This document shows, in pieces, positions 24,801-48,939 of a stretch of DNA of 64,000 bases (position 1 is the first letter of the stretch; each line of letters begins with the position of its first letter). Position numbers and translations under genes: made by a program. The stretch lies in NCBI RefSeq assembly GCF_902459465.1, contig NC_047079.1, forward strand, positions 10,292,001 to 10,356,000, in the 5' to 3' direction. Below the pieces are notes generated by a model. It did not search any database. It saw nothing but the letters and a program-made list of their open reading frames with translations, and was not told the origin of the DNA. The stretch is from Asterias rubens. Taxonomy: Eukaryota.

Positions 24801-26059
24801 TGCTTCGAGACCTCCCCATCAGGTGATTCCGAGGTTTCCACTGACACGGATTGAATACACTCTGCAGTGGTTTCTGTGGACTCTGTCATATCTTCCACAG
24901 ACATGGTGACAATCTCATTTGTCTGCCATACTGGGAATACCTCTTTAGAAGCTGAGGTAGTTGTCTCATTTTCAGACATAGATTGCTGAGCTGTTTGTTT
25001 GACAACCTGTATCAAAGGTGTGTCAACATCGCTATCAGTGGCAGAAACCTTGAGATGGTTCCCATCATAAGCTGTCATATCTCTTCGGACCTGTAACTCA
25101 TCAGGAAATGTTCGGGTCTGTGGTGCTGATGGGATGCCCTGCTGTGTTGTTTCATTCAGCAGATTCTTTAGTATTTTAGTCTTGATGACATCCTTAAACG
25201 ATTTTTCAAGGGAATCTTTTATCACATTTTGAACAGACATGTTGACAATATTCTGACGTGTATTGGGTGAAAGTGCTTCATCTTCAGTTAAGTTTGATGT
25301 CAGACCAAAAGTAAGTGATTCCTGGGTTGAATGATCTATTGTTGCACCTGTTTTCTTGGATGGTTGAGAGAGGTCCGAGGTAGCTCCATCAGACATTTCA
25401 TATGGAATCGTAGAGCAAGACATTTGCAGAGGTGCGTCATCATGACCCAGAATATGAGACTCTCTGACAACTTCTGCCCCAAGCGACTTTGCATCGGCCA
25501 CAATTTCTGAGGCTTGATAATAGAAAGCATCGTGAACGGGATCTCTTCCCTGCAACTCCCACGTCAGTGCTTCCTGAGTAAAGTCAGATGTACATCTAAG
25601 AATGCACGGTTGTAACTTCATGAAAAATGATGAATCAATGTTGTCCCCTGAAGAAACTGTTGAGTCATCAGTTATAGTGGCAGGAGTGGGATCGGCTCTA
25701 AAAAGACTGACAGGAACTGGAGTGACAGGAGCTTGGGTGACAGAAACTGCGGTGACAGAAACTGCGGTGACAGGAACTGGGGTGACAGGAACTGCAGTGA
25801 CAGGGACCGGGGTGACAAGAACTTGGGTGACAAGAACTTGGGTGACAGGAACTTGGGTGACAGGAACTTGGGTGCCAGGAACTGAGGTGACAGGAATATT
25901 TAGTGCAGTGTCCACCCAGTTGGCTTCGTTTAAAGCCATCATCTCTCTCACTGTCATACTTGTGCGTCTTTTTCGCAGTTGGATACTTCCGCCACTGTGC
26001 TGAAAACGTGCTCCTGCACTTGAGAACCTTGGAACCTTTTCATCCGGATGGCTTCTCAT
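21891..26059 (-). CDS. Large Pro/Ser/Thr-rich protein with two C-terminal ZAD (zf-AD)-like C4 zinc domains, about 1133 aa from M26059
   Basis: Open 2.8-kb exon (acceptor before 26084, donor AGG|gtaagc at 23279/23278) spliced in phase 0 to exon 22511-21891 (tttcag|CAA). Last exon has CLNC-x40-CKFC and CVNC-x46-CLGC with ZAD-like spacing. Start codon and upstream exons uncertain. Confidence 0.8.
22905..23075 (-). mobile_element. tRNA-derived SINE (relatives about 16302-16645 + and 13920-14118 -)
   Basis: Head GTGTCGTGGCTCAGCGGTTAAGAGCAC, body TGTAAAAGAACCC..GAAGAGTAGGGGTCAACCC. Confidence 0.7.
25707..25897 (-). repeat. Coding 15-bp minisatellite (about 13 units) encoding VT[QPA]V[PSL] pentapeptides
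   Basis: Plus-strand unit GGTGACAGGAACTTG repeated head-to-tail with substitutions, in frame in the large exon. Confidence 0.92.
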
Positions 26060-27158
26060 TTCAGCAAATAAATTGAGTTGACATCTGTTTTGAAGAAAAA
26101 AAAAAGAACAAAAGCTTAGGACACATGGTAACTGACCTTAAGTGGACATTTTATTGTCATCTTCTTGTATCCCTTTCCCAAAACTAGTTTAGCACTGAAC
26201 CTTGGGTAGCACCTTTTAGGGTCCTTTGAGTCGAAGCCTCATACAGAAAACTACAAAAATTGAGAAACTTGAGTGTGTTTTGGTTGATTGCGCACAACCA
26301 GTACATTTGAATTGTACTTCGAAAATCACCACAACAGAAACCTACTGGGCATCAAAAAATAATTAACTCAAAAAAAGTAATCATAAGGCTGAAAGGATTT
26401 AGGTACTTTTTGAAACACAAAGTCCACAGATTTACATTACACCACCCTTTGAATGTAATGAGTAGGAAGCAAACCCCTTAAAATATTACCTGCTCAGGTG
26501 CTGTAGTTTTTGTTTTACTAATTTTACGAAAACTACATCACCTCAGCAAGTAATATTTTAAGGGAAGCCTTCTACCTACCATCACTATCTTCACACTGTG
26601 CGACTTTAATCTAAATCTGTTGACATTGTGTTTTGTGTCCTTCAAAATGCACCTGGACCCTTTAAAGGGACTTTCAGAGTACTTAGTCAATTTTAAAATA
26701 GATTTACCAATACTCTATAGACGATGTTACCTACGTTCAAACCGCCCTCTGTTGACAAAACACTGTACAGGTCACGTTTTGCCGGGCAAAAAGATGCGCA
26801 GTCAGGGTAACATTGCATCTTTTTCTAGCTGGCTGCCAAAACACAAAGGTTTTGCCCGGCGGTATGCGCGCGAATCATGTTATGTTTTTCGAGTGACGTC
26901 AGAGGTCACATCGTCTATACACTGTGAAGAATAAAGTAATGCCTCAACCATACATTTTAGACCAAACGTCTCCAACAGTCATTTTCATTGGCTTAGACAT
27001 TTGAATGACTTTGTAGATTAGTCAGGAATGATCTTGGGTATTATTTCTTCTCTTCTTTTTGTTTACTAATTATAGGCCCTACACATGTATACTTATTTTA
27101 AAATATAAAGGTCAAATTTTGACAACAAGTTTTCACCAATTCACAATTTTTTATTTAA

Positions 27159-27531
27159 AGGCAGTGGACACTATTGGTAATTACTCGAAATAATAATTGG
27201 CATAAAACCTTTCTTGGTGACGAGTAATGGGGAGAGGTTGATGGTATAAAACATTGTGAGAAACGGCTCCCTCTGCCATAGTTTTCGAGAAAGAAGTAAT
27301 TTTCCACGAATTGGATTTTAAGACCTCAGATTTAGAACTTGAGGTCTCAAAATCAACCATCTTAACGCACACAACTTCGTGTGACAAGGGTTATTTTTCT
27401 TTCATTATTATCTTGCAACTTCGATGACTGATTGAGCTCATATTTTTACAGGTTTGATATTTTATGCATATGTTGAGATACACCAACTGTGAATGCCAGT
27501 CTTTGACAATTACCAATAGGGTCCACTGCCT
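27159..27531. mobile_element. Kolobok-type MITE, AGGCAGTGGACAC family
   Basis: TTAA|AGGCAGTGGACAC...GGGTCCACTGCCT|TTAA. TTAA target with purine-purine termini is the Kolobok pattern. Further copies 32449-32808, 33197-33582, 52979-53330; partial about 48565-48857 and 50090-50388. Confidence 0.85.
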
Positions 27532-29642
27532 TTAACATCAACTTTTTTGAAACCCCAAAAGGCACCCCATAGTAAAAAAAAAAAAACACCTTTTAGTGTC
27601 CTTTGATTTTCAACGTCTGGGTAATAAAAGAGATTGTAAAATATACCTTTGAAATAATTCTATAGCTTCACATTGTGTTGAGAAGGTGTGCTTCAAGGAT
27701 GAGTGGTCAAACTATCAATGTTTTCTAAGAAGAAAAGAAAGTGTGACCCCCCCCCACCAACCTTTAGGATTGGCATCTGTACCCATCCAGGTCTCGCTCT
27801 AATGCATTACAAACAAGAACTAATATTACTATTTTGGTAAATATTTTGAAATTGTGCTTTGTGTTACAAAAAGTAACTAAAAGTCTCATACACATGTACA
27901 GACCCACAAATCATTAGATGACACGTCAAAAAGAACAATAATCCAAAGGCAAAATTGTGGAAAGTGGGGGAAATCTTAGAAATGATGTCACAAGAGAAAT
28001 ATCATTTAAAGGGAAGGTACACGTTTGCTAATTACTCAAAACAAATATTAACTTATAAACTGACTTGGTAACGAGCATTGGAGAGCTGTTGATAGTATAA
28101 AACATTGTGGGAAATGACTCCCTCTGATTCTGAAGTAATGTAGTTTTCGAAAAAGAGGTAATTTCTGACTAAAATAATAAAAGACTTCTAGCTAGAAGTC
28201 TTTAATTCCTATCTGAAAGCACACAAATTCGCCCAACAAGGGTGTTTTTTCTTTCATCATTTTCTCGCAACTTCACTGACCGATTGAGCCCAAATTTTCA
28301 CATTTTTGTTATTTAATGCACATGATGGGATACACCAAGTGAGAAGACTAGTCTTTGACAATACCAAAGGTGTACCTTCCCTCTAACATGTAGTGACATC
28401 ATTTCCTAGAATAAGGTTATTTGGCAATGGTCAACAGGGGAGTTTCTGTTAACTCAGTCGAGGTCAGAGCCTAGGAATGTGTGCTGAGCAATGGGAGAGT
28501 ATGGCCACCTGTTGAGATGTAACTTGGGGGACCAGTGAATATCCTTTAAAAGTGAAATGGTTTCTCAATCAGTCTGCTGTTATTTATAATTCTACCTCTC
28601 ATGTTGCTATTAGTTTTAAGAGTGATTACCCCACATATACCCAATAACCCCTCTGGGCTTTCCCCTCTAGAGTCGTTTATAAAATAAAACAAAAACATTA
28701 CTACAACTTTTTCAGTCACTAGACAGCAGGTACGCCATGTCCTTAACAGTTGTATAGGAAGCAATACTAGTTGGGCAGAATTCTGACTTGTCCTGTCATT
28801 TGGTCAGCGGACCACTGATAAAAAAAGGGAGAAATTTTACCAGCTCTTTGCCCGGCCTGTACCTGGCTTTTGTCCATGGTCTGATATGGTCTGATACATG
28901 GTCATGGTCTGTCCCTACACAGTAGACAACTATGGATGAATTCAATCTGTGTAGAGTTATCCTTTTAATCTTTTAATTTAACTGATTTAACTTTTAATTT
29001 AAGGGATAGGGGGGCACAGAGGTGCTTAAAGACCTGCCAGACATACTGACACCACCTGATGCAATAAAAAGATGGCTGGAATGGTTCCACTTTATCAGAG
29101 GGGTAGATCTAAGATAGGTTTAAGATGCTAAGATTTTGTAATATGGGTGTTGTTGTGTTGCCCCAGCCCATCCCCCAAAACATGGGAACTGGCTCCCCTT
29201 CCTTTGATGTGGAACGGTCTAGTCTACAATACCATGGACAATAAACTTGTTCTGGGCAATGCAATTGGGAAAAACAATAAAATACATAAATATGTCTCCC
29301 AAAATGGATTTCAATTCTTTGAGCTTGGGAGTTTCAGTTTGGTTGGCTCAAGATAAACACCCAATGGCTCAACTCAGCATGGTCTAAAGGCTATCAGTTT
29401 CAAATCTCCAATTCACTGGCTACACAAGCCCCCCCCCCCCCATTGCAAGGTCACTGGTCCCAACCACCAGTAAAGGCTGAAGTGGAAGAAGAAGGAAATA
29501 TTCATGGTCTCTCTTGGGACCCTGAATAGTTATCAGCTTTAAAGGGAGTACTGTTGTTTTATGAACAGGGGTGACTTTGGATTTATTGTAACATAGAAAA
29601 ACAAATAACTATTTTATGTAGTTTTTTTTACATTATTAACAT

Positions 29643-30984: not shown

Positions 30985-32448
30985 TTTGGATCACCAAGCC
31001 CCTATGATTTTTAAATGTCCCCGCCCCCTTCATTTTGTTTAAAAACCCTCATCAGTTCCTTCAAGATTTAACAATACAAGGCTTTATAGTGTGGTCTTAA
31101 TCTTAAGTATCGGGAACGGAATGCAAAGAATGTAGCTTTTTGTGGAGTGTTTGGGGGGGGGGGCTTTTCTGAGTTTAAAGGTTGGGTGGAGTCCATATCA
31201 TATCAATTTATTTGGGGCCATATTAATCGAAACGCTTGCCAAAGATTGAACATTAAAAAACAGTTACAACAAAAATGTTGTTAATGAAGAAGAAAAAAAT
31301 CAAACATAGACAAACTTAGCATTTAAGAATAACAATATCACTATCAGTTTATTGCCACCCCGATAGTATTTTGCATACAAAATTTTTGCAAGTGACCATG
31401 AGTAACAATGAGTGAAGTAAAACAATGTTTTATCACATTAGGCACTTTCAACTGACAAGTTCCTTGCATCACGAATACAGTTTCATCTTTACTTTGATGG
31501 CTTGTATTTTTTCTTCTTAAATCAATGGCCACACAAATACTTATACCATAAAGAAAAAAAAAACAGTTTGCCTGGCGTTTTACAAGTAAATTTTGTTCGC
31601 AGATCCCAACATGGTCACCCATCTGTAGAAATATAACAAAAGGCTACTGGTAGTACCTACGTGCACCATGCCCTATATGTTTGGGAATGGGGAGGGTGTG
31701 CCCCCCCCCCCTCAAACATACCCCATATCTCACACATGTTTCTATACTTTAAGACACTCTAAATTACCTCTTGCTCAGTGTCTACCTCCAAGCTCATCAG
31801 AAGTACCTCCCCTAAAAACCTGTGATAGAGTTTTTTTGTACAAGAGGACTAAAGACTTCCTGAGATTCCCTGAACACAATGAAGACAAAAAAGAGTGGGG
31901 GGGGGGGGTACATACCATGCCACATATCAAGCTACCAAGCAAAGAATGTGCTTACATTATGGCTATGGGAATGAAGATCATTTTGACTATGGCTCTCTCA
32001 TTAACTCTCCCAATGCATGGAGGAGGGAATAGCCTGTCAGATTTAATGCTTAATAAGGCATTGTCTGCCTCCCCTTTTTGTGTAGTGATTGGAATCTCAA
32101 GTATTCTTAACAGGTCTTTTTAGGGAGGGGACTTCTAACCAGGAACATAGTGTGTTAAAGTACAGGAACATTTGGGGGGGGGGGGGGGGTACCCTCTGCC
32201 AAGTTGTGGACATGGTATTTCCAGCCTATGTTTGGCTTCCAATTCCATTGATATTTAGCGGGGAAAAATGATGCATGCGTGCAATGTGATAATATTTTCC
32301 CAATTGTTACTTTCATTGAGGCGAGGGCGAGTTGAATGAAAATTTCTCCATTGCAAGAATGCAAAACATGTATTAATTGTATTTAAAGGGCCTGGGTACT
32401 TTTTATACGACACAAAACACAATGTTTACAGATTTAAGTTAAACTTAA

Positions 32449-32808
32449 AGGCAGTGGATACTATTGGTAAGTACTCGAAAAAATTATCAGCATAAAACCT
32501 CACTTTATAACGAGTAATGGGGAGCAACTTGATGGGGAGAGGTTGATAGTATAAAACATTGTGAGAAAGAAGTAATTTTCCATGAATTTGATTTCGAGAC
32601 CTCAAGTTTAGAATTTGAGGTCTCGAAATCAACCATCTGAAAGCACACAACTTCGTGTGACAAGGGTGTTTTTTTTCTTCATAATTATCTCGCAACTTCG
32701 ACGACCAATCGAACTCATATTTTCACAGGTTGATTGTTTTATGCATATGTTGAGATACACCAAGTGAGAAGACTGGTCTTTGACAATTACCAATAGTGTC
32801 CACTGTCT
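32449..32808. mobile_element. Kolobok-type MITE nested in another TTAA-family element (about 32385-33010)
   Basis: TTAA at 32445-32448 and 32809-32812; the flanks rejoin into sequence seen uninterrupted near 8860-8945. Confidence 0.82.
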
Positions 32809-33113
32809 TTAAGCTGTTTGAAGATATTCATGGTAAAAAGCTTCCCTTAAAATATTACTTCCTGAGATGCTGTAGTTTTTGAGAAAAGGAGTTAAACAAG
32901 TCACACAAATAATTTTCGTCTCAGTGAGAAAACTATTTTAGCACATTTTACTCATTTCTCAAAAACTACAGCTCTTCAGCAAGTAACATTTTAAGGTAAG
33001 CTTTCTACTATCATTAACAAAAACGCAAACCCCAAATGCCACTGAAGCAGCTCATCAGTAGCAGCTAAGAAATACTAGACTTGAAGACAGTCCTTCAACC
33101 TCTAGAAGCCTCC

Positions 33114-36100
33114 TCAGGAATGCTGTTGAAGATAAAACAAGAATATTGACAAGTTGATTTTGATGCGAGTTTAAAACAATGTGCAATAGATGTTAAAGGC
33201 ACTGGACACTATTGGTAATTACTCAAAATAACTGTTAGCATAACACCTTACTTGGTAACGAGCAATGGAGAGATGTTGATAGTGTAAAACATTGTGAGAA
33301 ACTACTCCCTCTGAAGATAATATGGAGTTTTTTGAGAAAGAAGTAATTTCTCACTCAAATATTTAAATTGATTTCGAGACCTCACCCGAGGTCTCAAAAT
33401 CAAACATCTGAAAGCATGCAACTTCGTATGACAGGGATGTTTTTTCTCCATTATTCTCTCGCAACTTCGACGACCAATTGAGTTAAAGTTTTCACAGGTT
33501 TGTTATTTTGTGCATAATAACGTTGAGATACACTAAGTGAGAAGACTCATCTTTGACAATTTCAAAAAGGTGTCCAGTGCCTTTAATTTTGCATTGAGAT
33601 TAAAGAATATTATTTGGTTTTCCCAGGGATGTGTATTGAGAGAGTTGCAACACAGAGGAACCAGTCGTCTTTGGTCACATGGTTGCTTGACGCCATTTGC
33701 TTGATGCAGCACAAAGTAATTGAACTGATCACAAAAAAGACAGCTTATAAGAAGTTGATGTTAATTCAAAAGTGGCGCGCTTGCATAAAATGCTGATTGT
33801 CACATGCGTTGCTTCCATTTTCCATTCGCGCTTAAGAAACTCATAATAGCTGCCTATCCCTATGGGGTCCAACCTCGTTCCCCCTTGGCTTTATTTCAAA
33901 TGATAATAATAATAATAATAATATCGAAGTCTTAATAGCGCACGTATCTACCAAACAAGGTACTCAAGGCGCTGAGTATATACAAACATTCAGAAAGATA
34001 GGTTATTGCAGTGATGAATTCTGAGACCCAATAATTTAGCACCCTATAAGGGTTTACAAGGTGCTACGGCGCATTAAGCAGCCACAACCAGGAACACCGG
34101 GGCGAACCCCTTCTTTTTTCGACAAGTGCACTGGGTTATTTTACATGCGTTACACAACACATGGGACCAACGGCTTTACGTCCCATCCCATACTAGTTCT
34201 AAGGGGAGTGACTCACCACACATTTTGGGCAGACCATTTCCTTGTCTTCTAGTAATGCAGGCGTCACCACCTCAGGAGGAAGGCAGTTGATGTGGTACCA
34301 CGACTGACACTGTCCATCACAACCTATCCAGTCCTCACCATCTTCCCAATATTCTTCCTCACAAACTGGGCAGTAAACCTCATCCTTCGAGTGCTTGCTG
34401 CTTCTTTTCCTTCGTCGTGGTGACTGCTTCCTCCCTCGTCTCCTAGAACTCTTCCCAGATTTGGAAAACTTCCAGGTGCTTTTCGATTCTGTGTGGTAAG
34501 CTTCCTTATAGAGTTTCTTCCAAACTGAAAACAATGGTGTCTCCTCAAGATCCAGCCCGCTTTCAATACAAGTTCTGTAAGTTTCTCTTGTTGTTTTGTC
34601 GAGTTTATCATCCAGTTTCTTGAAGACAATTTCAGCTACATTTGAAGATGTTGCAGAAGTGGAGAGGTGTTTTTCCTGGTCATCATCTCCCTGAACGGGT
34701 TCTTTATACTTTGGTGGGTTTCTTTCCGGAGAGTTTAGGATTTTATCTGGCAGATGAGCATCATCGACCATCTCTCGATCGAGAGGATAAACTCCTGACT
34801 GAATGAAGCAACTACGGATGGCCTCTGAGTTGTCAGCCTCTTTCCATGCAGAGCTGATTACATGAGCTACATTGTCAGTTCTTACGGGTAACCACTGGTT
34901 TTGCGTTGTCCATTTTGTGAGCCATGCCATTCTGAAGGGGCCATCCTCTCCAATGTCAAGGGGTTGAACTAGTGACATCGCTTTGGTTGGTACTCGAAAC
35001 AAGTACACATCATTTTTACGCGCTGTGACGTATGCCTCATAAGGTATGGAATTGTGTTGGCAACTCAGAAGAAGAACAACAGGGCGTGCATTTCCGAGAT
35101 TCTTAACGAAGTGCCACTCTAACCACGAGCTGAATGCATCTTGCTTCTTTCCATCTCTCTCAAGAATGATCACTCCCGATCCCTTGGATGCCCCATCAAG
35201 GGGATCCCACTGGTTGGTCTTGTGACACATTCCCCGATAGCGATAAATAATGAAGGGTGGAAGAAGATGCCCGTCTGCACTCGCACACATCCCGACTGTT
35301 GCTCTTCTGCGTCCGACAGCAAGGCACACAAACGGCTCTGCAAACACCACAATTTTGCTTGTTTTCTTGTCAATCTCAAATGTGGTTTCCGCATAATTGA
35401 AAATTTGGCTAGGTTTATCTACTATGTCAAGTTTTATGAGGAGGGATTTCAGTTCTCTGAACCACTCATCTAAACCTCTCTTTGTAGGAGCAGCATCGCA
35501 AAGCAGAGCTAAGTTGGAGGTTTTCATTTCTTTCAATTTAGGGTGACGCCGTAAGAAACTATAATACCAGCGGTAAGATGGTCTGCCATTTATAAAAGGG
35601 CTATTGTCTCGCTTGAAGAAGCTCTGCACTGCATCTCGAAGCAAAACTGCAGGGACCTGGAAACCTCCCTCGGACATGGTTAAGACCCAGTTAGCAAGGT
35701 CTTGCTCTTCCTCTTCTGTCAAGACTGGGGCTGGTCCATGTTGAGTAGTCATGGGAACCTCTGCTTTGGAACGGCGATACAGCTTACCAGCATGGACTCT
35801 CCAATAGGCTGCAGCGGCTGTCACCGTCTTAAACTTCCCCGACTGGAATTCTTCAAGTCCACACTTGATTCTTTGTGCCTCTGGAATGTCAGCAACACTA
35901 GGTGCAGAAGTGGGATTATCCAAACCCTTACGAAGGTACAAATTGGCTTTTCGAGTTTTCTCCTTCTTTAGTTTCGCTTTCGCTGACTGGCGCATCTTCC
36001 TTGTGACTTTTTCCTTAACAACCGGCAAGGGGGTTGTCTTGGTCCTTTTACTTTTCCTTTTTGATACATTTTCTGCTCTGATTTGCTTTGTCCGTGATTT

Positions 36101-37151
36101 TACCCTCTTATCTCCTCTGTGTTTGGCTGGTCTTGATTTTGTTGAAAACTGCTTGGAATCTTCTTGATTCTCTGGTGTTGGACTTGGGCTTGAATCGGAT
36201 GTCGTTTCAATATCTAGAAGTAGTAGGTGAAAATCGCCAAGTGAGATTTAGTATGCATAAAAATGTATAAAAAAATAAAAAAAATACATAACAAATAGGC
36301 TTAATATCTTATGAAACCACAGATACCTCATCTGTGAACTTAATCACTGTGGCTCGCAAGCCTGATGAAACCTGTATACATGTGTGCATGTGAACCAAAA
36401 ACACCAGTAAACATGGTTAACTTAACCCCGTTCTTCCGCAATGTTCTGGGTTCTTGATCCACTCTCCAAACTAAGGCAATGGTATATTAAGTCACAAGTG
36501 CCAACTCTGGGGAAAATTGAGGCAACAAATTTGAGTGTCAATCATCACACCCTGTGATCACTGATGTACGTGTATCTACCTACCTAGGGTATGATTGACA
36601 TTTGACAAATCAAACTAATTATAGTAAATAGTGTTAAATAAAACCAGCACCCTTCATCCAATCAATACAAATAATTGAGGAGGGGTTTACATGTTTAAGG
36701 TATGGGATTAAGTATTGATTGATTGAATTTATTCGGATAAAAATACAGCAAGAACATGCCAAAAGTATATACACAACAACAGAAGAAACCAATGAAGAAT
36801 AATAAGATTTTAAGATAAACCGAAGTAAAAAGAACACAAGATAGTACAGTAGAATTTGAAATACGTACTAGTTTACTACACAAAATTATCCAAGGATAAC
36901 GTAACCCATTGAAATCCACTTGAAATCTTACCAATTATTGATGCGGCCGCCGTTTCTTCAATGATGATTATCTCATTTGTACCATCACCATCACCAGTGG
37001 GCCTTTCCTCATGGTGATGATGATGAGGCACCGTGATGTCCTCTTCGATTTCGACGACTTCGAATTCGACTTGGGACTCCGGAACGATTTCTTCTCTTTC
37101 ACCTATTTTGACAACTAGGCCTGGCTCAAAAATCTCAAAAACCTCAGACAT
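33114..37151 (-). CDS. Domesticated pogo/Fot-like transposase-derived protein A (acidic/His N-terminus, psq-like HTH, CENP-B/Tc5 HTH, degenerate DDE_1, PHD), about 741 aa
   Basis: Exons 36932-37151 (ATG; donor G|gtaaga), 34217-36213 (cttctag|AT; donor GTG|gtgagt), probable last exon 33114-33122 (ttcttgttttatcttcaacag|CAT TCC TGA). Motifs FNYAETTF, LLLSCQHNS, QPLD, GVYPLD; C4HC3 PHD CPVC..CDGQC..H..C..CPKC. Last micro-exon less certain; unspliced stop at 34199. Confidence 0.88.
33197..33582. mobile_element. Kolobok-type MITE in the probable last intron of transposase-derived gene A
   Basis: TTAA|AGGCACTGGACAC...GTGTCCAGTGCCT|TTAA. Confidence 0.85.
33903..34188 (-). mobile_element. 5'-truncated SINE (Deu-domain-like) with L2-type 3' end and (TAT)n tail
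   Basis: Minus strand GGATGGGACGTAAAGCCG..AAGAAGGGGTTCGCCCCGGTGTTCCTGG..CAGCGCCTTGAGTACC..GTGCGCTATTAAG then (TAT)n. Deu assignment needs a Dfam check. Confidence 0.72.
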
Positions 37152-38002
37152 GTTTATAGATAATAGTCACGCATGCCTAATAAATACAAAGAAGGTTTGT
37201 TTACTCTTAGAAAAGACGCAAAAACAACTGCACAGTTGACAGTGCTTGGTTTGTTTACTGCATAATACAGGCCAAAAACTGGTGTGTGGTACCCCGTGTT
37301 GCCCGAACCTTTCACTTGCGAAATCGATTCACAACTATGGGACCAGTCTGTCAAAGCATAAAGAGCGCCACCTGTTAAATTCAATTTTTTTTTTGCTAGG
37401 GTGTGGGCGTGGTAAGGGATGGGGAGGTCTCCAAAAGTTTGCTGCCCCTTTAAATCGTATTCAAAGAACTAAATTAGTATTTGTTCCTCTATCATTTGGT
37501 CAAGCTTAACCACTTTATTTGTTTATTAGTAATTGCATTGACTTTTATTTATTTACTTTATTTGTTTAATTTGTCATTTTCTAGAAGGGGGGGGGGGGGT
37601 ATGTTACAAATCAACAAAATATATAATTACTTTCCCCCATCTAACCTTAGTCTATTACTTCACATAACCTGTTGATGCACGTATACTCACAAGTTGAACT
37701 TTTAAATGAAACTACCACAGGTTCAAAAATCTTAGTCAATTCATACATTCTTACTTTCCAAGATCACTCCTGCCCCAACATCAGCCCAAGTGGTAAATAC
37801 AACTTTTTTTAACTGGATCTACTAATATAGATAAATCTCTAGGGAGACCACCAACACATGCTAGATAGCCTAGTGTGTACACCACCAGCACATCAATATG
37901 GAGGTTGCAGGTTCAAGTCCATCTAGAACCAATTTTTCATTGTTCAACCCCAATATTACCCAGTCAATTTCCCTTATGGGTTATCATTTGATTTACCTTT
38001 AA

Positions 38003-38358
38003 AGGAACACGTTGCCAAGGACCGGTCAAGATGGTCTTTGAAAAGTGTTTGCAACCGTTTGTTATAAAATGCATATGGGTAGAAAGATGTTGTAAAAGTA
38101 GAATACAATGATCCACACAAACTGCCTCAAAATTGCACGGTTTTCCTTTTACCTCATCGACTAACACGGCGGCCATTTATGGGAGTCGAATTTTGACTCC
38201 CATAAATGGCCGACCGTGTTAGTTTACAAAGTAAAAGGAAAACCACGCAATGTCGAGGCAAATTTGTGTGGATCATTGTATTCTAGTTTTAAAACATCTT
38301 TCTAACCATATGCATTTTATAAAAAACCAACTCGTCCAATCCAAGGCAGCGTGTCCCT
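38003..38358. mobile_element. Kolobok-type MITE (AGGAACACGTTGCC termini) with internal palindrome
   Basis: TTAA|AGGAACACGTTGCC...GGCAGCGTGTCCCT|TTAA; 18-bp internal inverted arms CGGCCATTTATGGGAGTC near 38170-38212. Confidence 0.82.
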
Positions 38359-39153
38359 TTAATCATTTCAATTGGTGACTTTTGGGAACACAAGGTGGCA
38401 GCAGACTTACCAGGTAAATCCGTTTTTCTCAGGAATATGCGCATGCTTAGAACTATACAAACAATAGACTTGGTAAGTCTGCTGCCACCTAGCAATCCAA
38501 AGTCTCGGACCAAACTTCAGAACCCAACAAGCAGAAAAGGAGACCATACAAATTATTATTTTTTATTTTGTGAAACTTTTATTTAAAGAGGTATTTTTTT
38601 ACATTATCACAAAAACACCTATGTACAACTCACAATTCCGTCTTTGTTGAAAGGTGTAGACATATGTATGTATTTCTGTCAAGAATTGTTTGTTTTGTCT
38701 CATTGATAAAGAAAGCTACACAAATTCCCAAGTTGTTGAAATAAAAATCTCTCTCATATTTAAGGACTCTATCGGTTAGAAAATGAGTGCATCATGAAAC
38801 CTTGGAGCCCCTCTTTAATAATATTTTCACTATAACAAACGGTTTCATGGACAAACTCGACCCATCCAAGGCAACATGTCCCTTTAAATTGGATTCGAAA
38901 CCAGGGACCAAAGAGGTGACACCAATCACAAAGTGTCATGTGGCAAGGCAGTTTGGCTGGTAAACTCATTCTGGTAATCATAACATTGCTGTGCTTAGCT
39001 ACTTTGTGTGCTTAAGCAGCTTAAGTAGTTAAGAACAACAAAATTGTGCTTACCACTAGCCAAACTACCATGTCTGTGTGTCCTATTTGTTAAGCAGTAT
39101 TTTCTGTTTAAGCAGCTCTATGAGACTGTGCCCTATATACAGCAAGGCAATAG

Positions 39154-41914
39154 TTAATGCTGAATCGAATCCACAGAAGGTTTTCTTGATTTCTGGAAGA
39201 AAATGAAAAAGAGAGAAGGGGGAAAATAAATAAATGACACAAGAAAAAAATACTGAACTTAAAGCCATTGGACCCTTTCGGAACAGAAAAAATAATAAAA
39301 GTTCACATGATTTACAAATAACTTACAGGGTTTACAGAAGGTAATGGTGAAAGACTTCCCTTGAAATATTATTCCATGAAATGCTTCACTTTTTGAGAAA
39401 ACATTAAAACAATATCAATTCTCGACATCGAGATTTATTTTAAACACATGTCATGACACGGCGAAACGTGCGTAAACAAGGGTGGGTTTTCCCGCTAGTT
39501 TCTCCCAACTCCGATGACTGATTGAGACTAAATTTTCACAGGTTTGTTATTTTATATATAAGTTGTGAGTGATACACGAAGTGTGGGCCTTGAACAATAC
39601 TGTTTACCAAAAGTGTCTAATGGCTTTAAATTAGCGTCCAACTATTTATCTATGATGTCACTTTGTTTATATTGACTTTGAAAAGTTTTTCGCGCTTAAA
39701 ACAAAATAAATAAACGTGCCACTTTAAAGCTTGGCACCCCTGAACAAAGATATTGACAAAGTAAGGAAACCGCCAGCATGAGCTAGTTAGCTCAGTTGGA
39801 AGAGTGCCGGCACGTTAATCTGGAGGTTTATGTTTCAAGACCCACTCTCGTAAATTGTTCTTTGTTCAACCCCCAAAAACCTTTAAACTTACAGTACACT
39901 GTGGGCAGAACATTTCCTTGTCCTCCAGCAAGACCGGCGTGACAAGCTCCGGAGGAAGACAGTTGACGTGAAACCACTGCTGGCATTCACCGTCACACCC
40001 AATCCACTCTTCTTCATCTCCACCAAACTTCTCGCTGCAGACTGGACAGATCGTCTTATCGTCACTAGCGGCGGCCTCAAGGCTCGGTTCCTCCGCGTCC
40101 TGAGTGGTCAACTTTTCCTGGTCTGTGGTTGTCACAACGACTTCTACAGACGTCATGGGAACGTTGGGGTCATTCTTGAAGGCTTCGAGGTAGAGTTTCC
40201 TCCAGACTGGAAAGAGGGGTGAGTCTGCGATGTCGAGATTATTCTCGATGCATGTGCGATAGAGTTCTCGTTTCGATTTATCTAATGTATCGTCGAGTTT
40301 CTGGAAGAGGAGCAACGCAGCGATTGGTTGATCACTCTCGGGAATGTCCACCTCAGACTCAGAGTCATCATTTAAAGCTTGGTCGTTGTCAAAGTCGACT
40401 TGGGACTGGTCGACGGTGGAGAGGAATTTCAGTGTCCCGGATGGGAGATGTTCATCGTCAACCATTTCACGATCTAAGGGATACACACCCGCCTGTAAGA
40501 AACAGCCTCGGATGAGTTCTCCTTGCTCCGCTTCCTGCCAAGCATCCCCGACCACACTTCCAACATTCCTGACGTTCACAGACACATGTCTGTTGCTCTT
40601 CACCCATTTCATTAGCCAGTTAGATTTGAAAGGTCCGTCTTCCCCTATATTGACCGGTTGGACAAGAGCGGCAGCTTTAGGCGGGACTCTGAAGAAGTGA
40701 ATGTTGTGTTCCGAGGCGATGGCATAGGCCCCGTAGGTGATGTCGCTCTCGTTTAAATCAACAAGCAAAACAACTGGAACATTCTCTTCCACCTTGTGAA
40801 CAAAGAAGTTGTTGATCCAGTACCCAAAGATGTCTCGGTTGGGATGGGATCTTTCTAGGAGTAATTCTTCTGCACCTTTTGGAGCACCGTTAAGGAAATC
40901 AAACTCCTTGTGAGAATTCTTCAAACCTTTGCAGATGATGAACGGCGGGAGGAGGTCGCCTCCTGCATTTGCGCAGATGCAAATTTTGATTTCTCTACGG
41001 TGATGCTCATCATCTTGAGCTTTTCCTTTCGGCTTTAAGACATTCATGACGATTCTCTCTGTCCTCTTGTTCATCTCAAATCCAGTTTCTCCGTAACTCC
41101 AGATTTGCCGGGGTTTATCAGCAACACACAAATCCGTTAGAAAACACTGAAGCTCATTAAACCATTCATCAAGCACAGAATTTGTCAGCTCTGCTCGACA
41201 AATCGATGTCATCTTGGACATTTTCAGTCCCTTCATAAGTTTGGGATGGCGTCGAACGAACTTATGATACCAAGTATGGGACGGTCTGTCGTTTGTAAAT
41301 GGGTTACCGTCTTTCTTGAAGAATGTCTTAACGGCATCACACACCATTCCAGGTGCAACTGGGAAGCCTCTTTTCCCCATCGTTACCACCCAATTGACCA
41401 GGTCCTCCTCATCTTGTTCAAGTAAAACTTTGCGGGGTCCGCGCTTGGCATCAAGGGGTACCTCCCCGTTGTGACGTCGATAAAGTTTTGCTGCGTGAAC
41501 TCTCCAATATGCCGCTGCTTTCGAGACAAACTTAAACTTCCCTAGGGCGAGGTCTTTCATTGCGCCTTTGATTCGGTCATTCTCAGTCATTTTTGCAATG
41601 GCCGGGGAGGACGTTGGATGATCAAGTCCGACTCGTTTATAATCCGTGCTTTTGTACTTCTTACGCTTCTGACCTCTCCCCTTCTTATGAATGACTTCCT
41701 TAGATATCTTGATCTTGATTTGTTGATCTGCCTCTCGTTTAAACCTTCTGCCTTCATTAGTTGCTGCTTTACTTGATGTTGTTGTTGACTTGGTCTTTCT
41801 TTTATCACGTGCTTTGACGACTCTACCCTTCTGGGTGGGTTGCTTTTGCTTCGTTTTCAGACGTGAAGACTTGAGACTGGCTTTTCTTTGATTACTTTGT
41901 GCTTTTCTTGCCAT
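39154..41914 (-). CDS. Domesticated pogo/Fot-like transposase-derived protein B (basic N-terminus, psq-like HTH, CENP-B/Tc5 HTH, degenerate DDE_1, PHD), about 686 aa
   Basis: Coding exons 39893-41914 (acceptor before 41920; donor ACT|gtaagt) and 39154-39192 (long pyrimidine tract then AAATCAAGA, KSRKPSVDSIQH*). Likely non-coding exon ending at 42646 (AG|gtacg). Collinear with protein A from the HTH through the PHD. Confidence 0.88.
39263..39625. mobile_element. Kolobok-type MITE, AGCCATTGGAC family, in the last intron of gene B
   Basis: TTAA|AGCCATTGGAC...GTCTAATGGCT|TTAA; inverted second copy at 48940-49300. Confidence 0.85.
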
Positions 41915-43033
41915 CTTGATCTGAAAATTGGATTGAGATTTTTGTAAGATTTAATTTACATGTATTTAGACTAATTTGAATATTTACAGTAATTATGATT
42001 ACGCCCCAGCAGTCACCGACAGTGACACTGCACACTGGGTCTGTGTCTAGTTAATTAACTCATGTTTTATGTGCGGACGATAGGGCCTATGCTAACGCTA
42101 TGCACAGAATTAATTTGACATTCACTGTTCCATTCAGGCTACAGAATGACAGAGCAATGTGTACATAATTTATTGTCAGTTTGCTGTGTGTGATTTACAC
42201 GGATAACTTTCCGTATGTGCCACCACTTTTTCACTCATTTAAAAAAAATCGAAAAAGGGATATCTCTTTTCTCATCAAGATTCAAACAAACTACAAAAAA
42301 GGAAGGTTAAATTAGATTCAATCAGATACTATTTATAAATATATAAATATTTCATTCATATTGAATGAAAAAGTGGTGGCGCCATACGGAAACTTTTCAA
42401 ATTGCACTGCTATCTAGCCCAGTGCACGGTGGCACTGACTGACGGCCTACCACTACAAGCAGAACAGAGGGCTACACAGTCAACAGTCATGACAGTACAT
42501 TGCTCATTCCATTGCCGACCTATCTAACTAAAACTCAACATGCTTCACCAGTTTCGTGAAAAAAATACAGCCCCCAAAAAAGAATGGGACAGTAACAAAT
42601 ACCATGCAATTACACTAATAATTCATAACGAAATAAGAAACGTACCTCTTGATAACAGATTATCGTCAAAACATTTTACAATTCATCGTCGAAACGTTTC
42701 TTTCAACTAAAAATACGGACGTAGTACTAGTAGATCGACGACGAACTTCGACTGCCGTGAATATTTTTACCTCAGCTCGGCACTGAACACCGCCCTCTCG
42801 CGTCTGGCATTATTATTTTTCTTTTCTAATACCGTACCAAAGATTGAAGTGACACCACAGCCAGCAAGTCGATAAAAGAAGGGCAATTAAACCCGGGGAG
42901 GAAGTTCTGGTGTTTTCTTTTCTGACTCCCACAAACAAAAACCTACATGCATAGATGATGTTGGGGGGGGGGGGGGCTTCTCCTCCCCTAGTAAAACCCA
43001 ACCTTTGCGCGCCACTCTTGCCTCTAAGTCGGA

Positions 43034-46041: not shown

Positions 46042-47109
46042 CTATGCGTTATTTGTAAACGCAACCGGACCGGTGTATCTAGCTTCAGCCACTGACATTG
46101 CCATCGTCCCTTCTTCGGCAGAGTTAGACCTAACGTTCAGTCGGATAAAAGGTATGAGTTGGGCCACTGCCGCCCTGAAGTTTTTGTTCAGCCAGACATA
46201 AATAATGGGATTTGCACAAGAGTTGATAAACGCCAAGATTGTAAATGCTCGGTAGATGGTGCTCCGGAAATAGTCTGGTGACAGTACGCCGAAGTTAAAC
46301 AATAAGAACCCCATTTGGTCTGGTAGCCAGCAAATGATGAAGGTGAGGACCACGATGAGGACCATCTTAATCACTCTACGTCGACATCTGAGTAAGGAAA
46401 ACGCTGGTGAAGATGTGGATTCGTTCCGCTTCAGAAGGGACCTCGCTTGCATCTGAAGTTCTCTTATGGCGCGAAAGTGAGACACCACCATCAGAGTAAC
46501 GGGAATGACAAACTCTACAGTGAATATCATACAACCGTGGGCCATTTGGAAAGCACTGCTCGGCCATGTCAGTTCGCAGTTGTTACCCTCGCTAACTCTG
46601 GTGACGAAAAAACTTCCACTGTTCATAACAATTGCAGCGGTCCAAATTGCTGCAATAAAACACTTGATGCGGTTCTTGCTGAATATGAGCTTGTGCTTTA
46701 GAGGGTGTACCACAGCGAAATAGCGTTCAAGAGACAGCAAAGTCAGGATGAAGATTGAAGCCACGATTGACATCCACATTATGACGGCAGAATATGTAAA
46801 GATACAGTAGACTCTACCCACTGCTGAGTTGGGTACGTAGGTTAGAGACGGTAGGGGGATTATAGCTACAGATGTAATGAGATCAGCAACGGCTAACATC
46901 ACGATGAGTTTGTTGGAGTTGCTTCGATTACGGAGTTTCTTAACATACACAACGATGACTAGAATGTTACCAAAGATACCGAAGAGTGCCAGGATGAGCT
47001 GCACAATGAAGAACCAATCCCAAGTTATAGAAGCGACACCGTAGATATCCCTTGTGGTAGAAGTAGGATCCCAATCGGTGGCATTCAAAACGAAATCCAT
47101 ACTTGTCAT
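46042..47109 (-). CDS. Class A (rhodopsin-like) GPCR, galanin/allatostatin-A/somatostatin receptor-like, paralog 1, 355 aa, single coding exon
   Basis: 7 TM segments; GNILV (TM1), LAVADL (TM2), SLERY (TM3), CWLP (TM6), NPIIY (TM7); N-glycosylation NAT. The ORF-track start at 47124 is TTG; first ATG is 47109. Confidence 0.93.
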   Translation of the reverse strand: MTSMDFVLNATDWDPTSTTRDIYGVASITWDWFFIVQLILALFGIFGNILVIVVYVKKLRNRSNSNKLIVMLAVADLITSVAIIPLPSLTYVPNSAVGRVYCIFTYSAVIMWMSIVASIFILTLLSLERYFAVVHPLKHKLIFSKNRIKCFIAAIWTAAIVMNSGSFFVTRVSEGNNCELTWPSSAFQMAHGCMIFTVEFVIPVTLMVVSHFRAIRELQMQARSLLKRNESTSSPAFSLLRCRRRVIKMVLIVVLTFIICWLPDQMGFLLFNFGVLSPDYFRSTIYRAFTILAFINSCANPIIYVWLNKNFRAAVAQLIPFIRLNVRSNSAEEGTMAMSVAEARYTGPVAFTNNA

Positions 47110-48939
47110 GTCTGCATCCCACAAATCAGTGCCGTAAATACCGCGAAGTGAACGGTAGGCTGATAAGATCCGATCGAACAGTCAAGTGATTCAAAGTCTA
47201 AATACTAAAAATTGATACTCTGTAGACCGCAGACGAAGTATGTAACACCACGTACAATAAACAAGCATGATCTGGTGACTGACTAGCATTGTCAATAAAT
47301 AGGTTGCTCTCAGCATTAATATTGGCGACTGCCTTTAAAAGCTCTGCCTTTGCTAAAAGCTCTGCCTTCGGGTACGAACTTTGTGAAAAATATTGTCTGA
47401 GACCCCAACAGTCGATATGCAATTATCCGATGCCTGGCTTACGGCCTATAGTCAAACACCCGAACAGAGTAAAACGAGACATCGAAGAGATAATCAAAGG
47501 ACGCAATTTCAATACTTCGGAGTGAAGGTTGGCGAGCCATGCTAAATATTGTTTGCGTTTACTCCCCGAAGTCTATCTCGACGAATCAGAAATCCTTTCT
47601 AGTATGTAAATGTAGAAGCCGATAGGCAAGATGGGTATAAGTCATGCAATGTTTACTTTGTGCTAGTTCTGCCTTGTGTATATACAGACAACGAAAGACT
47701 AAACTTATATAGCCTCGATCCATTTTATATTTCCCAAAATTAAAAGTAAACAATGAAGTAACGGATGAAAAAGTTGTACAATAGGCCAAAAATAACATTG
47801 TATAAAAATAATCGGGGTTTTTAACTTGCATTTTTTATTTATTATATGTAACGTTGGAAATAATGTAATTGATTGTTTTAGGGAAGTAATTATAGTGTAT
47901 GAAAACGTAAGTTTGCAGATTAATTTTGAAACATAATTATCTGTGTAAAATAGCATTTCATGAATTAAAGAAACCATTCTAGCATAAATTTGAACTTTTC
48001 TTAGCATCAGACCAGCCCACCATTAATATGACTTTCGTATCCAATCCAATAATACACACTTTAAACACAAAACAGCCACTCAAAATCAATCTAAAATAAC
48101 TTCTGATTTTGGAAACGAGATTATATTTAGTCAAGCCACCACCTGAGAGAAATTGAACGCGTCTTGCTAATTTAATTACTGCTCCAATATCGGAACTGTG
48201 CACTATGCGTTATTATTGATTTCACGAAACAATTGAACTTTTCAGCTGTATTGTAAGCGAACGGTATAAAGACTCGACCTACATTTGTTGTTTACCAGAG
48301 ACTGGAACTATAGACTCGAACGTATTATGTATAGAGCTAATGAAGTTACTCCACGTATGGTTGAATAATTTTCCGCATACACTCAAAAAATGAGCAAAAC
48401 TATTATTGTATTTGTCACCTAGGGGAAATTTATTCGATTGTGCACGCAGTTTGTGATATTTCTTATTTGATATATAAGAAGAGAGCACTCTCTTCTTATA
48501 TATCAAATAAGAAATATCACAAACTGCGTGTATCTGATGTAAACAGTTACGAACGAGATATTTGTGAGAAACATTGTAAGAAACGGCTCCCTCTGAAGTG
48601 ACGTAGTTTTCGAGAAAGAAGAAATTTTCCACGAATTTGATTTCGAGACCTCAGATTATAGAATTTGGGGTCTCGAAACAAGCATCTGAAAGCACACAAC
48701 TTGGTGTGACAAGGGCGTACTTTTTCTTCCATTATTATCTCGCAACTTCGATCACCAATTGAGCTCAAATTTTCACAGGTTTGTTATTTTATGCATATGT
48801 TGAGATACACCAAGTGAGAAAACTGGTGTTTGACAATTACCAATAGTGTCCATGTCTTTAACTAAAATTTACTACCTAGACGAAAGATATTGAAAATCGG
48901 CTGGGACTACTTCTTTAGCCTACATAGGATCGTTGTTAA

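What the first reader, a model, noticed from the sequence alone, without database searches (positions are those of the whole stretch)
33114..41914. Tandem pair of domesticated pogo/Fot-like transposase-PHD genes
Seen: two long intact collinear minus-strand ORFs (psq-like HTH, CENP-B-type HTH, DDE_1 fold, shared helical motif KLDD.LDK..RE.YRTCIE..LD....PLF.VW.KLY.EA, PHD). Both are spliced, both lack flanking TIRs/TSDs, and they have diverged a lot without stops or frameshifts. Established: pogo-family transposases were repeatedly domesticated (CENP-B, JRK, TIGD, POGZ, fission-yeast Abp1/Cbh). Inference: a lineage-specific duplicated family of chromatin readers/DNA binders, possibly used against TEs or as genome organisers. 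I do not recognise a named ortholog.
Basis: partly seen in the sequence, partly recalled or inferred. Interest (0 to 1): 0.88.

Follow-up and report, generated by a model that had tools for sequence, protein, structure and literature searches.

The report
Sea-star domesticated pogo transposase-PHD gene pair
Two neighbouring sea-star genes are former pogo "jumping-gene" enzymes that can no longer cut DNA but have been kept under selection across two starfish orders, probably as DNA-binding chromatin readers; it is a clean, apparently undescribed example of a well-known kind of event.

Summary
The window is Asterias rubens. Two minus-strand genes, LOC117302191 ("B", 686 aa) and LOC117302190 ("A", 741 aa), are 44% identical. 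Each has a CENP-B/Tc5-type HTH, a DDE_1 core and a C-terminal PHD finger.

RNA contigs give three-exon, GT-AG models that reproduce the RefSeq proteins exactly. In both genes an intron starts at the same codon, just after the PHD.

- **Catalysis is lost.** B reads G-D-N and A reads A-S-D at the three DD35D positions.
- **No terminal inverted repeats** above chance flank either gene.
- **The tandem B-then-A pair is conserved** in A. amurensis, Acanthaster planci and Patiria miniata, so it spans two orders.
- **Selection is purifying.** dN/dS is 0.10-0.32, and it is lowest in the HTHs and the PHD.

The domestication reading is therefore supported.

New here:
- The PHD was not captured from the host. 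At least 15 close relatives with intact triads, from sea cucumber, urchin, molluscs, butterfly and coral, carry the same C-terminal PHD.
- A. amurensis has a third, divergent paralog just downstream of A. It is missing in A. rubens.
- The PHD resembles the H3K4me3 readers BPTF and KDM5A/B PHD3.

Function is inferred, not shown. Other first-reader notes of this scan on this same stretch reported the triad loss and the shared splice donor.

The parts
42646..42733 (-). Gene B (LOC117302191) exon 1, 5' UTR
   Evidence: RNA contigs X1 record 3 and X2 record 12 join 42646 to 41920. The donor is GTACGT and the acceptor TTTCAG.
39893..41920 (-). Gene B exon 2. It holds the CDS from the ATG at 41914: a basic N-terminus, two HTHs, the dead DDE core, the helical motif and the PHD.
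   Evidence: ORF, Pfam, spliced contigs. The model translates exactly to P0001.
38633..39192 (-). Gene B exon 3. It codes the last 12 codons and the stop at 39154-39156, then the 3' UTR.
   Evidence: X1 record 3 and X2 record 7 join 39893 to 39192. Peptide located. Model checked.
36932..37268 (-). Gene A (LOC117302190) exon 1. The ATG is at 37151. It codes a 73-aa acidic, His-rich N-terminal extension that lies outside the regions matched by transposase domains.
   Evidence: tblastn of P0007 residues 1-73. Spliced contigs X12 record 8 and X3 record 21. An acidic N-terminus is also present in the Acanthaster ortholog.
34217..36213 (-). Gene A exon 2: basic region, two HTHs, the dead DDE core, the helical motif and the PHD.
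32968..33122 (-). Gene A exon 3. It codes the last two codons and the stop at 33114-33116, then the 3' UTR.
   Evidence: Contigs X1, X2, X3 and X12 join 34217 to 33122. The model equals P0007.
41240..41410 (-). B: HTH_Tnp_Tc5 (CENP-B-type) DNA-binding domain, aa 169-225
   Evidence: Pfam PF03221, 29.0 bits against a cut-off of 22.2. dN/dS 0.07 between Acanthaster and Patiria.
40586..40993 (-). B: DDE_1 match, aa 308-443. The RNase H-like fold spans about aa 270-480 in the model.
   Evidence: Pfam PF03184, 34.4 bits. AlphaFold secondary structure. Foldseek hits to Mos1, SETMAR and Sleeping Beauty catalytic domains.
41090..41092 (-). B: triad position 1, codon GGA = Gly (Asp in active relatives)
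   Evidence: Alignment with intact-triad relatives. Codon read.
40757..40759 (-). B: triad position 2, GAT = Asp retained (Glu in Patiria B)
40649..40651 (-). B: triad position 3, AAT = Asn, 35 residues after position 2 (DD35D spacing)
40181..40306 (-). B: conserved helical motif, about aa 537-578, between the DDE core and the PHD
   Evidence: Invariant columns in A1. Modelled helices 530-543, 546-557 and 567-579 at pLDDT about 90. dN/dS 0.09.
39896..40048 (-). B: PHD finger, aa 623-673
   Evidence: Pfam PF00628, 30.1 bits against a cut-off of 24. dN/dS 0.06. Foldseek hits to the AL3 and KDM5B PHD fingers.
35531..35719 (-). A: HTH_Tnp_Tc5 domain (ORF aa 104-166)
   Evidence: Pfam, 28.6 bits.
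34805..35308 (-). A: DDE_1 domain (ORF aa 241-408)
   Evidence: Pfam, 36.6 bits, covering the full profile 2-177.
35390..35392 (-). A: triad position 1, GCG = Ala
35063..35065 (-). A: triad position 2, AGT = Ser
34955..34957 (-). A: triad position 3, GAC = Asp retained
34496..34630 (-). A: conserved helical motif (ORF aa about 467-511)
34220..34372 (-). A: PHD finger (ORF aa 553-603). All four positions that align with the BPTF aromatic cage are aromatic.
   Evidence: Pfam, 29.2 bits. Best solved-structure sequence matches are the BPTF PHD (E 1.2e-5), KDM5B PHD3 and KDM5A PHD3.

Best explanation
**What it is.** These are two host genes of Asterias rubens that descend from one copy of a PHD-finger-bearing pogo (DD35D) DNA transposon. 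That lineage still has intact-triad, multi-copy members in sea cucumbers.

**What is shown.**
- The element lost its terminal repeats.
- It gained introns and, in gene A, an acidic 5' coding exon.
- It was duplicated in tandem before Forcipulatida and Valvatida split.
- Both copies lost the catalytic triad: B reads G-D-N and A reads A-S-D.
- Both copies have since been kept under purifying selection, and both are transcribed and spliced.

**What is inferred.**
- The proteins no longer cut or join DNA.
- They probably act as nuclear, sequence-specific DNA-binding proteins through the two N-terminal HTH domains. These are the most constrained parts.
- The C-terminal PHD finger probably docks on histone H3 tails, most likely H3K4me3 or me2. 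The aromatic cage positions of BPTF and KDM5-PHD3 are kept, 4 of 4 in A and 3 of 4 in B.
- The dead RNase H-like core and the conserved helical motif probably serve as a dimerisation or scaffold surface, as in other Tc1/mariner-pogo proteins. Homo- or heterodimers of A and B are therefore plausible.
- The likely targets are promoter-proximal sites or relics of the ancestral element's ends.
- The output would be transcriptional or chromatin regulation, or repression of related transposons.
For: **Identity and architecture.** The closest database entries are the two A. rubens RefSeq proteins. Pfam finds HTH_Tnp_Tc5, DDE_1 and PHD. The AlphaFold model has mean pLDDT 75.6, with the folded domains mostly above 85. 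Foldseek hits are JRKL, POGZ, JRK, TIGD1/2/4/6, POGK, Cbh1/2, Abp1 and CENP-B, and the Mos1, SETMAR and Sleeping Beauty catalytic domains.

**Dead triad.** This shows in the alignment with intact relatives, and the codons were read directly.

**Host-gene structure.** Spliced RNA contigs from several runs, and from a second species, give three exons. The models match RefSeq exactly.

**No TIRs** above chance.

**Conserved tandem pair.**
- Acanthaster: FMO-like, then B, then A.
- Patiria: FMO-like, then B, then A.
- A. amurensis: GPCR, then B, then A.
- In the tree, A, B and C form one clade (SH-aLRT 99), and the species order is the same inside A and inside B.

**Selection.**
- dN/dS for B is 0.12-0.20 (A. 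rubens vs A. amurensis) and 0.13-0.15 (Acanthaster vs Patiria).
- dN/dS for A is 0.21-0.32, 0.24-0.31 and 0.10-0.14.
- Bootstrap 95% intervals reach at most 0.45.
- By domain: HTH1 0.04, HTH_Tc5 0.07, PHD 0.06, helical motif 0.09, DDE core 0.11, linkers 0.14-0.25.

**PHD.** The best solved-structure matches are BPTF, MTF2 (PCL2), KDM5B PHD3 and KDM5A PHD3. BPTF and the KDM5 PHD3 fingers are H3K4me3 readers. The two Trp residues of the WxxCD and xWxH motifs are conserved in all A and B orthologs.

**PHD inherited from the transposon.** Fifteen of 62 close relatives combine an intact D-D-D triad with the same C-terminal PHD. Named sources include Holothuria, Diadema, Haliotis, Pecten, Maniola and Montipora.
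Against: - No binding, localisation or phenotype data exist, so DNA binding, histone reading and dimerisation are all inferred from sequence and models.
- B has Ile or Val instead of an aromatic residue at one cage position.
- Genome-wide copy number in A. rubens was not measured directly. Only cluster sizes in protein databases speak to it.
- Flanking genes differ between Asterias (GPCR) and the valvatids (FMO-like), so synteny beyond the pair itself is conserved only within each order.
- dS is saturated between the two orders, so selection is only measurable within each order.
- The run type of several 'RNA?' runs is a guess by the tool. The spliced contigs themselves are the evidence.
Confidence: 0.8

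Rival explanations
1. They are domesticated, but their main job is transposon control. By binding the ends of related PHD-pogo elements or their MITEs without cutting, they would act as dominant-negative repressors or heterochromatin nucleators, as S. pombe Abp1/Cbh do for Tf2. They would not be gene regulators at H3K4me3 promoters.
For: DNA-binding domains inherited from a transposase are the most constrained parts. Intact-triad relatives persist in echinoderms. The locus and the window are dense in MITE-like repeats.
Against: No intact PHD-pogo element was seen in the window or among A. rubens proteins. The ends of the nearest transposon could not be defined, and the local MITE family could not be assigned to pogo. 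A BPTF/KDM5-like PHD points to active rather than silent chromatin.
Confidence: 0.25
2. They are non-functional, slowly decaying transposon copies that happen to lie side by side and are transcribed by read-through.
For: They are transposase-derived, and the catalytic residues are mutated.
Against: The ORFs are intact in every species examined across two orders. dN/dS is 0.10-0.32 with intervals excluding 1. Gene order and intron position are conserved. The transcripts are spliced and each has its own 5' exon.
Confidence: 0.03
3. They are still mobile, or still catalytic: a transposase with a non-canonical active site, or a composite site formed across an A-B heterodimer in which B supplies position 2 and A supplies position 3.
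For: The retention is complementary: B keeps Asp at position 2 and A keeps Asp at position 3.
Against: Position 1 is lost in both, and also in paralog C. In DDE enzymes all three carboxylates come from one RNase H fold (established knowledge). There are no TIRs. The genomic position has been fixed since the orders split.
Confidence: 0.02

Closest known systems
PHD-bearing pogo transposases with intact DD35D triads, e.g. Holothuria leucospilota KAJ8038340.1 / KAJ8023035.1 (auto-named 'Tigger transposable element-derived protein 6'). Similar proteins occur in Diadema, Haliotis, Pecten, Maniola and Montipora.
   Same: They share the order HTH, HTH_Tnp_Tc5, DDE_1, basic or helical linker, then a C-terminal PHD of the WxxCD...WxH type. 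They are the nearest sequence relatives, and the Holothuria proteins group with the sea-star genes in one echinoderm clade.
   Different: The transposon proteins keep D-D-D and occur as several near-identical copies on different chromosomes. The sea-star genes have a broken triad, introns and a fixed position, and they carry a helical motif that was seen clearly only in the asteroid clade.
Vertebrate TIGD1-7, JRK and JRKL (domesticated Tigger/pogo transposases)
   Same: They have the same fold and domain order up to the end of the DDE core, and they are the top Foldseek hits in Swiss-Prot. They are single host genes derived from pogo transposases (PMC7386202).
   Different: Sequence identity is only 14-18%. 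They have no PHD finger. They are independent domestications in vertebrates, not orthologs.
POGZ and POGK
   Same: A pogo transposase core is combined with a chromatin or transcription module (PMC7386202; Foldseek hits).
   Different: Their extra modules (ZNF array, KRAB) are host domains fused at the N-terminus. Here the extra module is a C-terminal PHD that came with the transposon.
CENP-B and fission-yeast Abp1/Cbh1/Cbh2
   Same: They are domesticated pogo transposases that bind DNA through the paired N-terminal HTH domains and dimerise (PMC4231638).
   Different: They have no PHD and arose independently. Centromere or Tf2-silencing roles are not implied for the sea-star genes.
RAG1/RAG2 (functional analogy only)
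   Same: A transposase-derived machine is coupled to a PHD finger that reads H3K4me3 (established knowledge).
   Different: It belongs to an unrelated transposase superfamily (Transib). The PHD sits on a separate subunit, and RAG is catalytically active.
PHD fingers of BPTF and of KDM5A/KDM5B (PHD3)
   Same: They are the best solved-structure sequence matches to the A and B PHD. The zinc ligands and the two cage tryptophan positions are shared.
   Different: This is only domain-level similarity (E 1e-5 to 1e-4). Histone binding by the sea-star PHD is untested.

Membership tests
pogo superfamily transposase-derived protein (IS630-Tc1-mariner group) | A DDE_1 (PF03184) RNase H-like core preceded by a CENP-B/Tc5-type HTH (PF03221) | tested here: met
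   Both domains score above the Pfam cut-offs in A and B. The fold matches pogo-derived proteins and Mos1, SETMAR and Sleeping Beauty.
pogo superfamily transposase-derived protein (IS630-Tc1-mariner group) | DDxD spacing typical of pogo (29-59 residues across families; 35 in Passer and within the Tigger range; PMC7386202) | tested here: met
   There are 35 residues between triad positions 2 and 3 in both proteins (386 to 422 in B, 457 to 493 in A).
Active (autonomous) pogo transposon | An intact D-D-D catalytic triad | tested here: not met
   B reads G-D-N and A reads A-S-D. All orthologs lack at least two of the three residues.
Active (autonomous) pogo transposon | Terminal inverted repeats (with a TA target duplication) flanking the ORF | tested here: not met
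   The best inverted 20-mers between the flanks score 15-17 of 20, the same as shuffled flanks. Nothing relevant appears.
Active (autonomous) pogo transposon | Multiple dispersed near-identical copies | tested here: inconclusive
   Each 90% cluster holds one RefSeq protein per Asterias species, plus one unnamed ENA fragment in A's cluster, against 4-13 members for related transposons. There are no further copies in the 64-kb window. The whole genome could not be searched.
Domesticated transposase gene | Orthologs at a conserved genomic position in divergent species | tested here: met
   The same-orientation B-then-A tandem pair occurs in A. rubens, A. amurensis, Acanthaster and Patiria, which belong to two orders. 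Outer flanks are conserved only within each order.
Domesticated transposase gene | Purifying selection on the coding sequence | tested here: met
   dN/dS is 0.10-0.32 in five unsaturated comparisons, and the bootstrap upper bounds are at most 0.45.
Domesticated transposase gene | Transcription as a host gene | tested here: met
   Spliced three-exon contigs occur in several runs and in a second species. The models equal RefSeq.
Domesticated transposase gene | A demonstrated host function | not testable with these tools
   This needs knock-out, occupancy mapping or biochemistry.
H3K4me3-reading PHD finger (BPTF / KDM5-PHD3 type) | C4HC3 zinc ligands | tested here: met
   Pfam PHD scores 29-30 bits against a cut-off of 24. 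The ligands are conserved in all full-length A and B proteins aligned. Acanthaster isoform X2 (P0004) lacks the PHD.
H3K4me3-reading PHD finger (BPTF / KDM5-PHD3 type) | An aromatic cage. The cage positions (BPTF Y10, Y17, Y23, W32; KDM5A W1625, W1635) are recalled from the literature, not checked here. | tested here: inconclusive
   In the HMMER alignment to BPTF and alignment A1, A orthologs have Y/F, Y/F, W, W and B orthologs have I/V, F/Y, W, W. Binding itself is untested. Paralog C has lost both Trp residues.

The most novel reading that the evidence does not exclude
A widespread and apparently undescribed clade of metazoan pogo transposons would carry its own H3K4me3-reading PHD finger to steer insertion towards active promoters. 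That would be a DNA-transposon counterpart of chromoviral chromodomains and of the RAG2 PHD. Sea stars would have retained a catalytically dead pair from this clade, which works as an A-B heterodimer tethering specific DNA sites (relics of the element's ends) to H3K4me3 chromatin. This would be a lineage-specific promoter-organising or transposon-decoy system kept since the two orders diverged.
Probability: 0.2. Interest if true: 0.7.

Novelty: new variant of a known kind. Interest (0 to 1): 0.45.

Why it matters
Domestication of pogo transposases is well documented in vertebrates, fungi and insects (CENP-B, TIGD, JRK, POGK, POGZ, Abp1/Cbh). This locus adds an echinoderm case with three useful features.

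- The source lineage is still recognisable in the same phylum. Before-and-after comparison is therefore possible.
- The chromatin-reading PHD finger came with the transposon rather than from a host gene. This points to a PHD-guided pogo clade that the papers I could search do not describe.
- The gene was duplicated, and the copies decayed at different catalytic positions while keeping the DNA-binding and PHD parts. This is a natural experiment on which parts of a transposase matter once catalysis is gone.

Patiria miniata is an experimentally tractable sea star, so the predicted functions can be tested directly.

Tried and rejected
- **Flank synteny between the window and the valvatid loci.** tblastx and tblastn found nothing outside the two genes. 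The FMO-like neighbour is not in the window, and the 929-aa downstream ORF has no match in L001 or L002.
- **Ends of the nearest intact transposon (Holothuria, L007 and L008).** Two copies share 3.6 kb plus 1.9 kb at about 97% identity, but no clear TIR or TA duplication could be read at the shared boundary. The same holds for the coral-like element in L003.
- **Ortholog DNA for P0002.** It was not available because the sample file is too large.
- **Holothurian dead-triad relatives (P0166, P0022).** They show no tandem partner and no FMO neighbour, so there is no evidence that the domestication predates Asteroidea.
- **Gene C in A. rubens.** tblastn of P0015 found only A and B.
- **Literature.** No paper combined pogo or pogo-like elements with a PHD finger, or described these sea-star genes. 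One search was a malformed query.
- **Superfamily of the local MITE family.** The flanking bases show no consistent target duplication.
- **Failed run.** timed out and was rerun.
- **Between-order dN/dS.** dS is saturated, so those values are not used.

Full report
**What is there.** The window comes from Asterias rubens. The 682-aa ORF at 39866-41914 (minus strand) is 100% identical to RefSeq "uncharacterized protein LOC117302191". The 609-aa ORF at 34199-36028 (minus strand) belongs to LOC117302190. I call them B (upstream) and A (downstream). They align end to end at 44% identity. Pfam finds HTH_Tnp_Tc5, DDE_1 and PHD above the curated thresholds in both. A conserved helical motif lies between the DDE core and the PHD.

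**Gene structure and expression.**
- RNA-derived contigs from several public runs lie on the locus as spliced pieces.
- For B the pieces are 42733-42646, 41920-39893 and 39192-38633.
- For A the pieces are 37268-36932, 36213-34217 and 33122-32968. A sister-species run gives the same structure at about 2% divergence.
- Joining these exons reproduces the RefSeq proteins exactly (686 and 741 aa), and every intron is GT-AG.
- In both genes the last intron begins one codon after the final CxxC of the PHD finger. That intron therefore predates the duplication.
- Exon 1 of A adds a 73-aa acidic, His-rich N-terminus that lies outside the transposase-domain matches. The Acanthaster A ortholog has a similar acidic extension.

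**Not a transposon any more.**
- In alignments with relatives that keep the canonical motifs (NxDE[TS]G, LLxD, QPxD), B reads Gly-Asp-Asn and A reads Ala-Ser-Asp at the three catalytic positions.
- The spacing between positions 2 and 3 is 35 residues.
- All orthologs lack at least two of the three carboxylates.
- The best inverted 20-mers between the flanks of either gene score 15-17 of 20. Shuffled flanks score 14-17.
- Because position 1 is missing from both proteins, the complementary retention of positions 2 and 3 cannot rebuild an active site.
- The three paralogs carry G, A and C at position 1. Loss before the duplication is slightly more parsimonious (3 base changes against 4), but this is not decisive.

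**Conservation.**
- Acanthaster planci (L001) and Patiria miniata (L002) both have FMO-like gene, then B, then A, in the same orientation.
- Asterias amurensis has GPCR, then B, then A, as in the window.
- These species belong to Forcipulatida and Valvatida.
- Outer flanks are not shared between the two orders.
- In an IQ-TREE phylogeny of 61 proteins, A orthologs, B orthologs and a third paralog form one clade (SH-aLRT 99).
- Inside A and inside B the species branch in the same order. The duplication is therefore older than the split of the two orders.

**Selection.**

| Gene | Comparison | dN/dS (NG86 / YN00) |
|---|---|---|
| B | A. rubens vs A. amurensis | 0.12 / 0.20 |
| B | Acanthaster vs Patiria | 0.13 / 0.15 |
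| A | A. rubens vs A. amurensis | 0.21 / 0.32 |
| A | A. rubens vs unnamed asteriid-like contig L004 | 0.24 / 0.31 |
| A | Acanthaster vs Patiria | 0.10 / 0.14 |

- Bootstrap 95% intervals reach at most 0.45.
- Between the orders dS is saturated, so those comparisons are not used.
- Domain by domain, in B between Acanthaster and Patiria, the values are HTH1 0.04, PHD 0.06, HTH_Tc5 0.07, helical motif 0.09, DDE core 0.11 and linkers 0.14-0.25.

**Origin.**
- A profile search of 1.8 billion representative proteins gave 10,203 relatives at E up to 0.001.
- Among the 62 closest, 15 combine an intact D-D-D triad with the same C-terminal PHD of the WxxCD...WxH type.
- Named sources are Holothuria leucospilota, Diadema antillarum, Haliotis cracherodii, Pecten maximus, Maniola hyperantus and a Montipora cluster. 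Several of these have multiple copies on different chromosomes.
- The Holothuria elements fall with the sea-star genes in one echinoderm clade (SH-aLRT 96).
- The PHD was therefore part of the ancestral transposase, not a host capture.
- The main pogo survey (PMC7386202) does not mention a PHD. No paper in the searchable library combined pogo-like transposases with a PHD finger.

**Structure and likely mechanism.**
- The AlphaFold model of B has mean pLDDT 75.6, and the folded parts are mostly above 85.
- It shows two helical DNA-binding bundles (about 104-148 and 166-261), an RNase H-like core (about 271-480), three helices for the conserved motif (530-579) and a PHD (about 620-677).
- The N-terminus and the linkers are disordered.
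- Foldseek returns JRKL, POGZ, JRK, TIGD2/6/1/4, POGK, Cbh1/2, Abp1 and CENP-B at 12-18% identity.
- From solved structures it returns the Mos1, SETMAR and Sleeping Beauty catalytic domains, and the AL3 and KDM5B PHD fingers.
- By sequence, the PHD of A matches BPTF, MTF2 (PCL2), KDM5B PHD3 and KDM5A PHD3 best.
- At the positions aligned with the BPTF cage (residue identities recalled from the literature), A orthologs have four aromatics. B orthologs have three plus an Ile or Val.
- My reading is that these are nuclear DNA-binding proteins that dock on H3K4-methylated chromatin, probably as dimers, and regulate genes or restrain related elements. All of this is inference.

**A third member.**
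- In A. amurensis a 692-aa single-exon paralog (P0015, "C") lies about 3 kb downstream of A (L006 8001-10079).
- It is about 31-33% identical to A and B. Its triad reads C-N-D, and it has lost both cage tryptophans.
- A. rubens lacks it. About 5.3-5.7 kb of L006 (about 5013/5432 to 10707) has no counterpart between window positions 33011 and 32448, where a MITE-like repeat sits.
- Whether this is a deletion in A. rubens or a gain in A. amurensis is open.

**Limits.**
- Whole-genome copy number was not measured.
- The ends of the ancestral element were not defined.
- Holothurian relatives with dead triads show no synteny, so an origin before Asteroidea is unsupported.
- Function is untested.
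- Other first-reader notes of this scan on this same stretch had already flagged the complementary triad loss, the shared splice donor and the acidic exon. I re-derived each from the sequence.

**Verdict.** This is a new architectural variant (pogo core plus a transposon-borne PHD, kept as a tandem pair) of a well-known kind of event. It is of moderate interest.

Noticed in passing
L006:8001-10079 (A. amurensis); counterpart gap at window 32448-33011: A third paralog 'C' (XP_071805377.1, 692 aa, single exon, triad C-N-D, PHD cage tryptophans lost) lies about 3 kb downstream of gene A in A. amurensis. It is absent from A. rubens, which lacks about 5.3-5.7 kb here. The polarity (deletion or gain) is unknown.
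   Followed up: partly
window 32444-32813, 33193-33586, 39256-39632; also about 7738-8110, 27153-27538, 28003-28389, 48569-48861, 52976-53335: A high-copy MITE-like element of about 380 bp with 27-35-nt terminal inverted repeats beginning TTAAAGGCAGTGGACAC. Copies sit in the last intron of both genes and just downstream of gene A, and the summed depth in RNA contigs is enormous. The superfamily and target duplication were not determined.
   Followed up: partly
window 36968 (exon 1 of gene A): RNA contigs differ from the assembly by a 9-nt deletion (run X12) or a 10-nt deletion (run X1, low depth) in the acidic, His-rich exon. This is probably a length polymorphism of the repeat-like tract. The 10-nt version would shift the frame and may be an assembly artefact.
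   Followed up: no
L001:5498-8003 (Acanthaster B): RefSeq lists two isoforms of the B ortholog. X1 (706 aa) has the PHD. X2 (675 aa, P0004) replaces the PHD with an unrelated tail, so a PHD-less isoform may exist.
   Followed up: no
L009:10001-13486 (Apostichopus japonicus) and L010:10001-12223 (Holothuria leucospilota): Sea-cucumber relatives with dead triads (1161 aa and 740 aa), no PHD detected and no tandem partner. These may be independent domestications from the same echinoderm pogo lineage.
   Followed up: partly
window 46042-47124 and 54305-55495 (minus strand): Two rhodopsin-type GPCR paralogs (7tm_1, E 7e-45 and 2e-40) lie upstream of gene B. One is also the upstream neighbour in A. 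amurensis.
   Followed up: no
window 23270-26059 (minus strand): A 929-aa ORF rich in Pro, Ser, Thr and Gln with VPVT repeats and no Pfam match. It is collinear with a 1186-aa gene in A. amurensis and has no match in the valvatid loci.
   Followed up: partly
window 56466-57251 (plus strand): A 261-aa ORF with a reverse-transcriptase fragment (RVT_1) and an ALKBH8_N-like match. It is probably a retroelement remnant.
   Followed up: no
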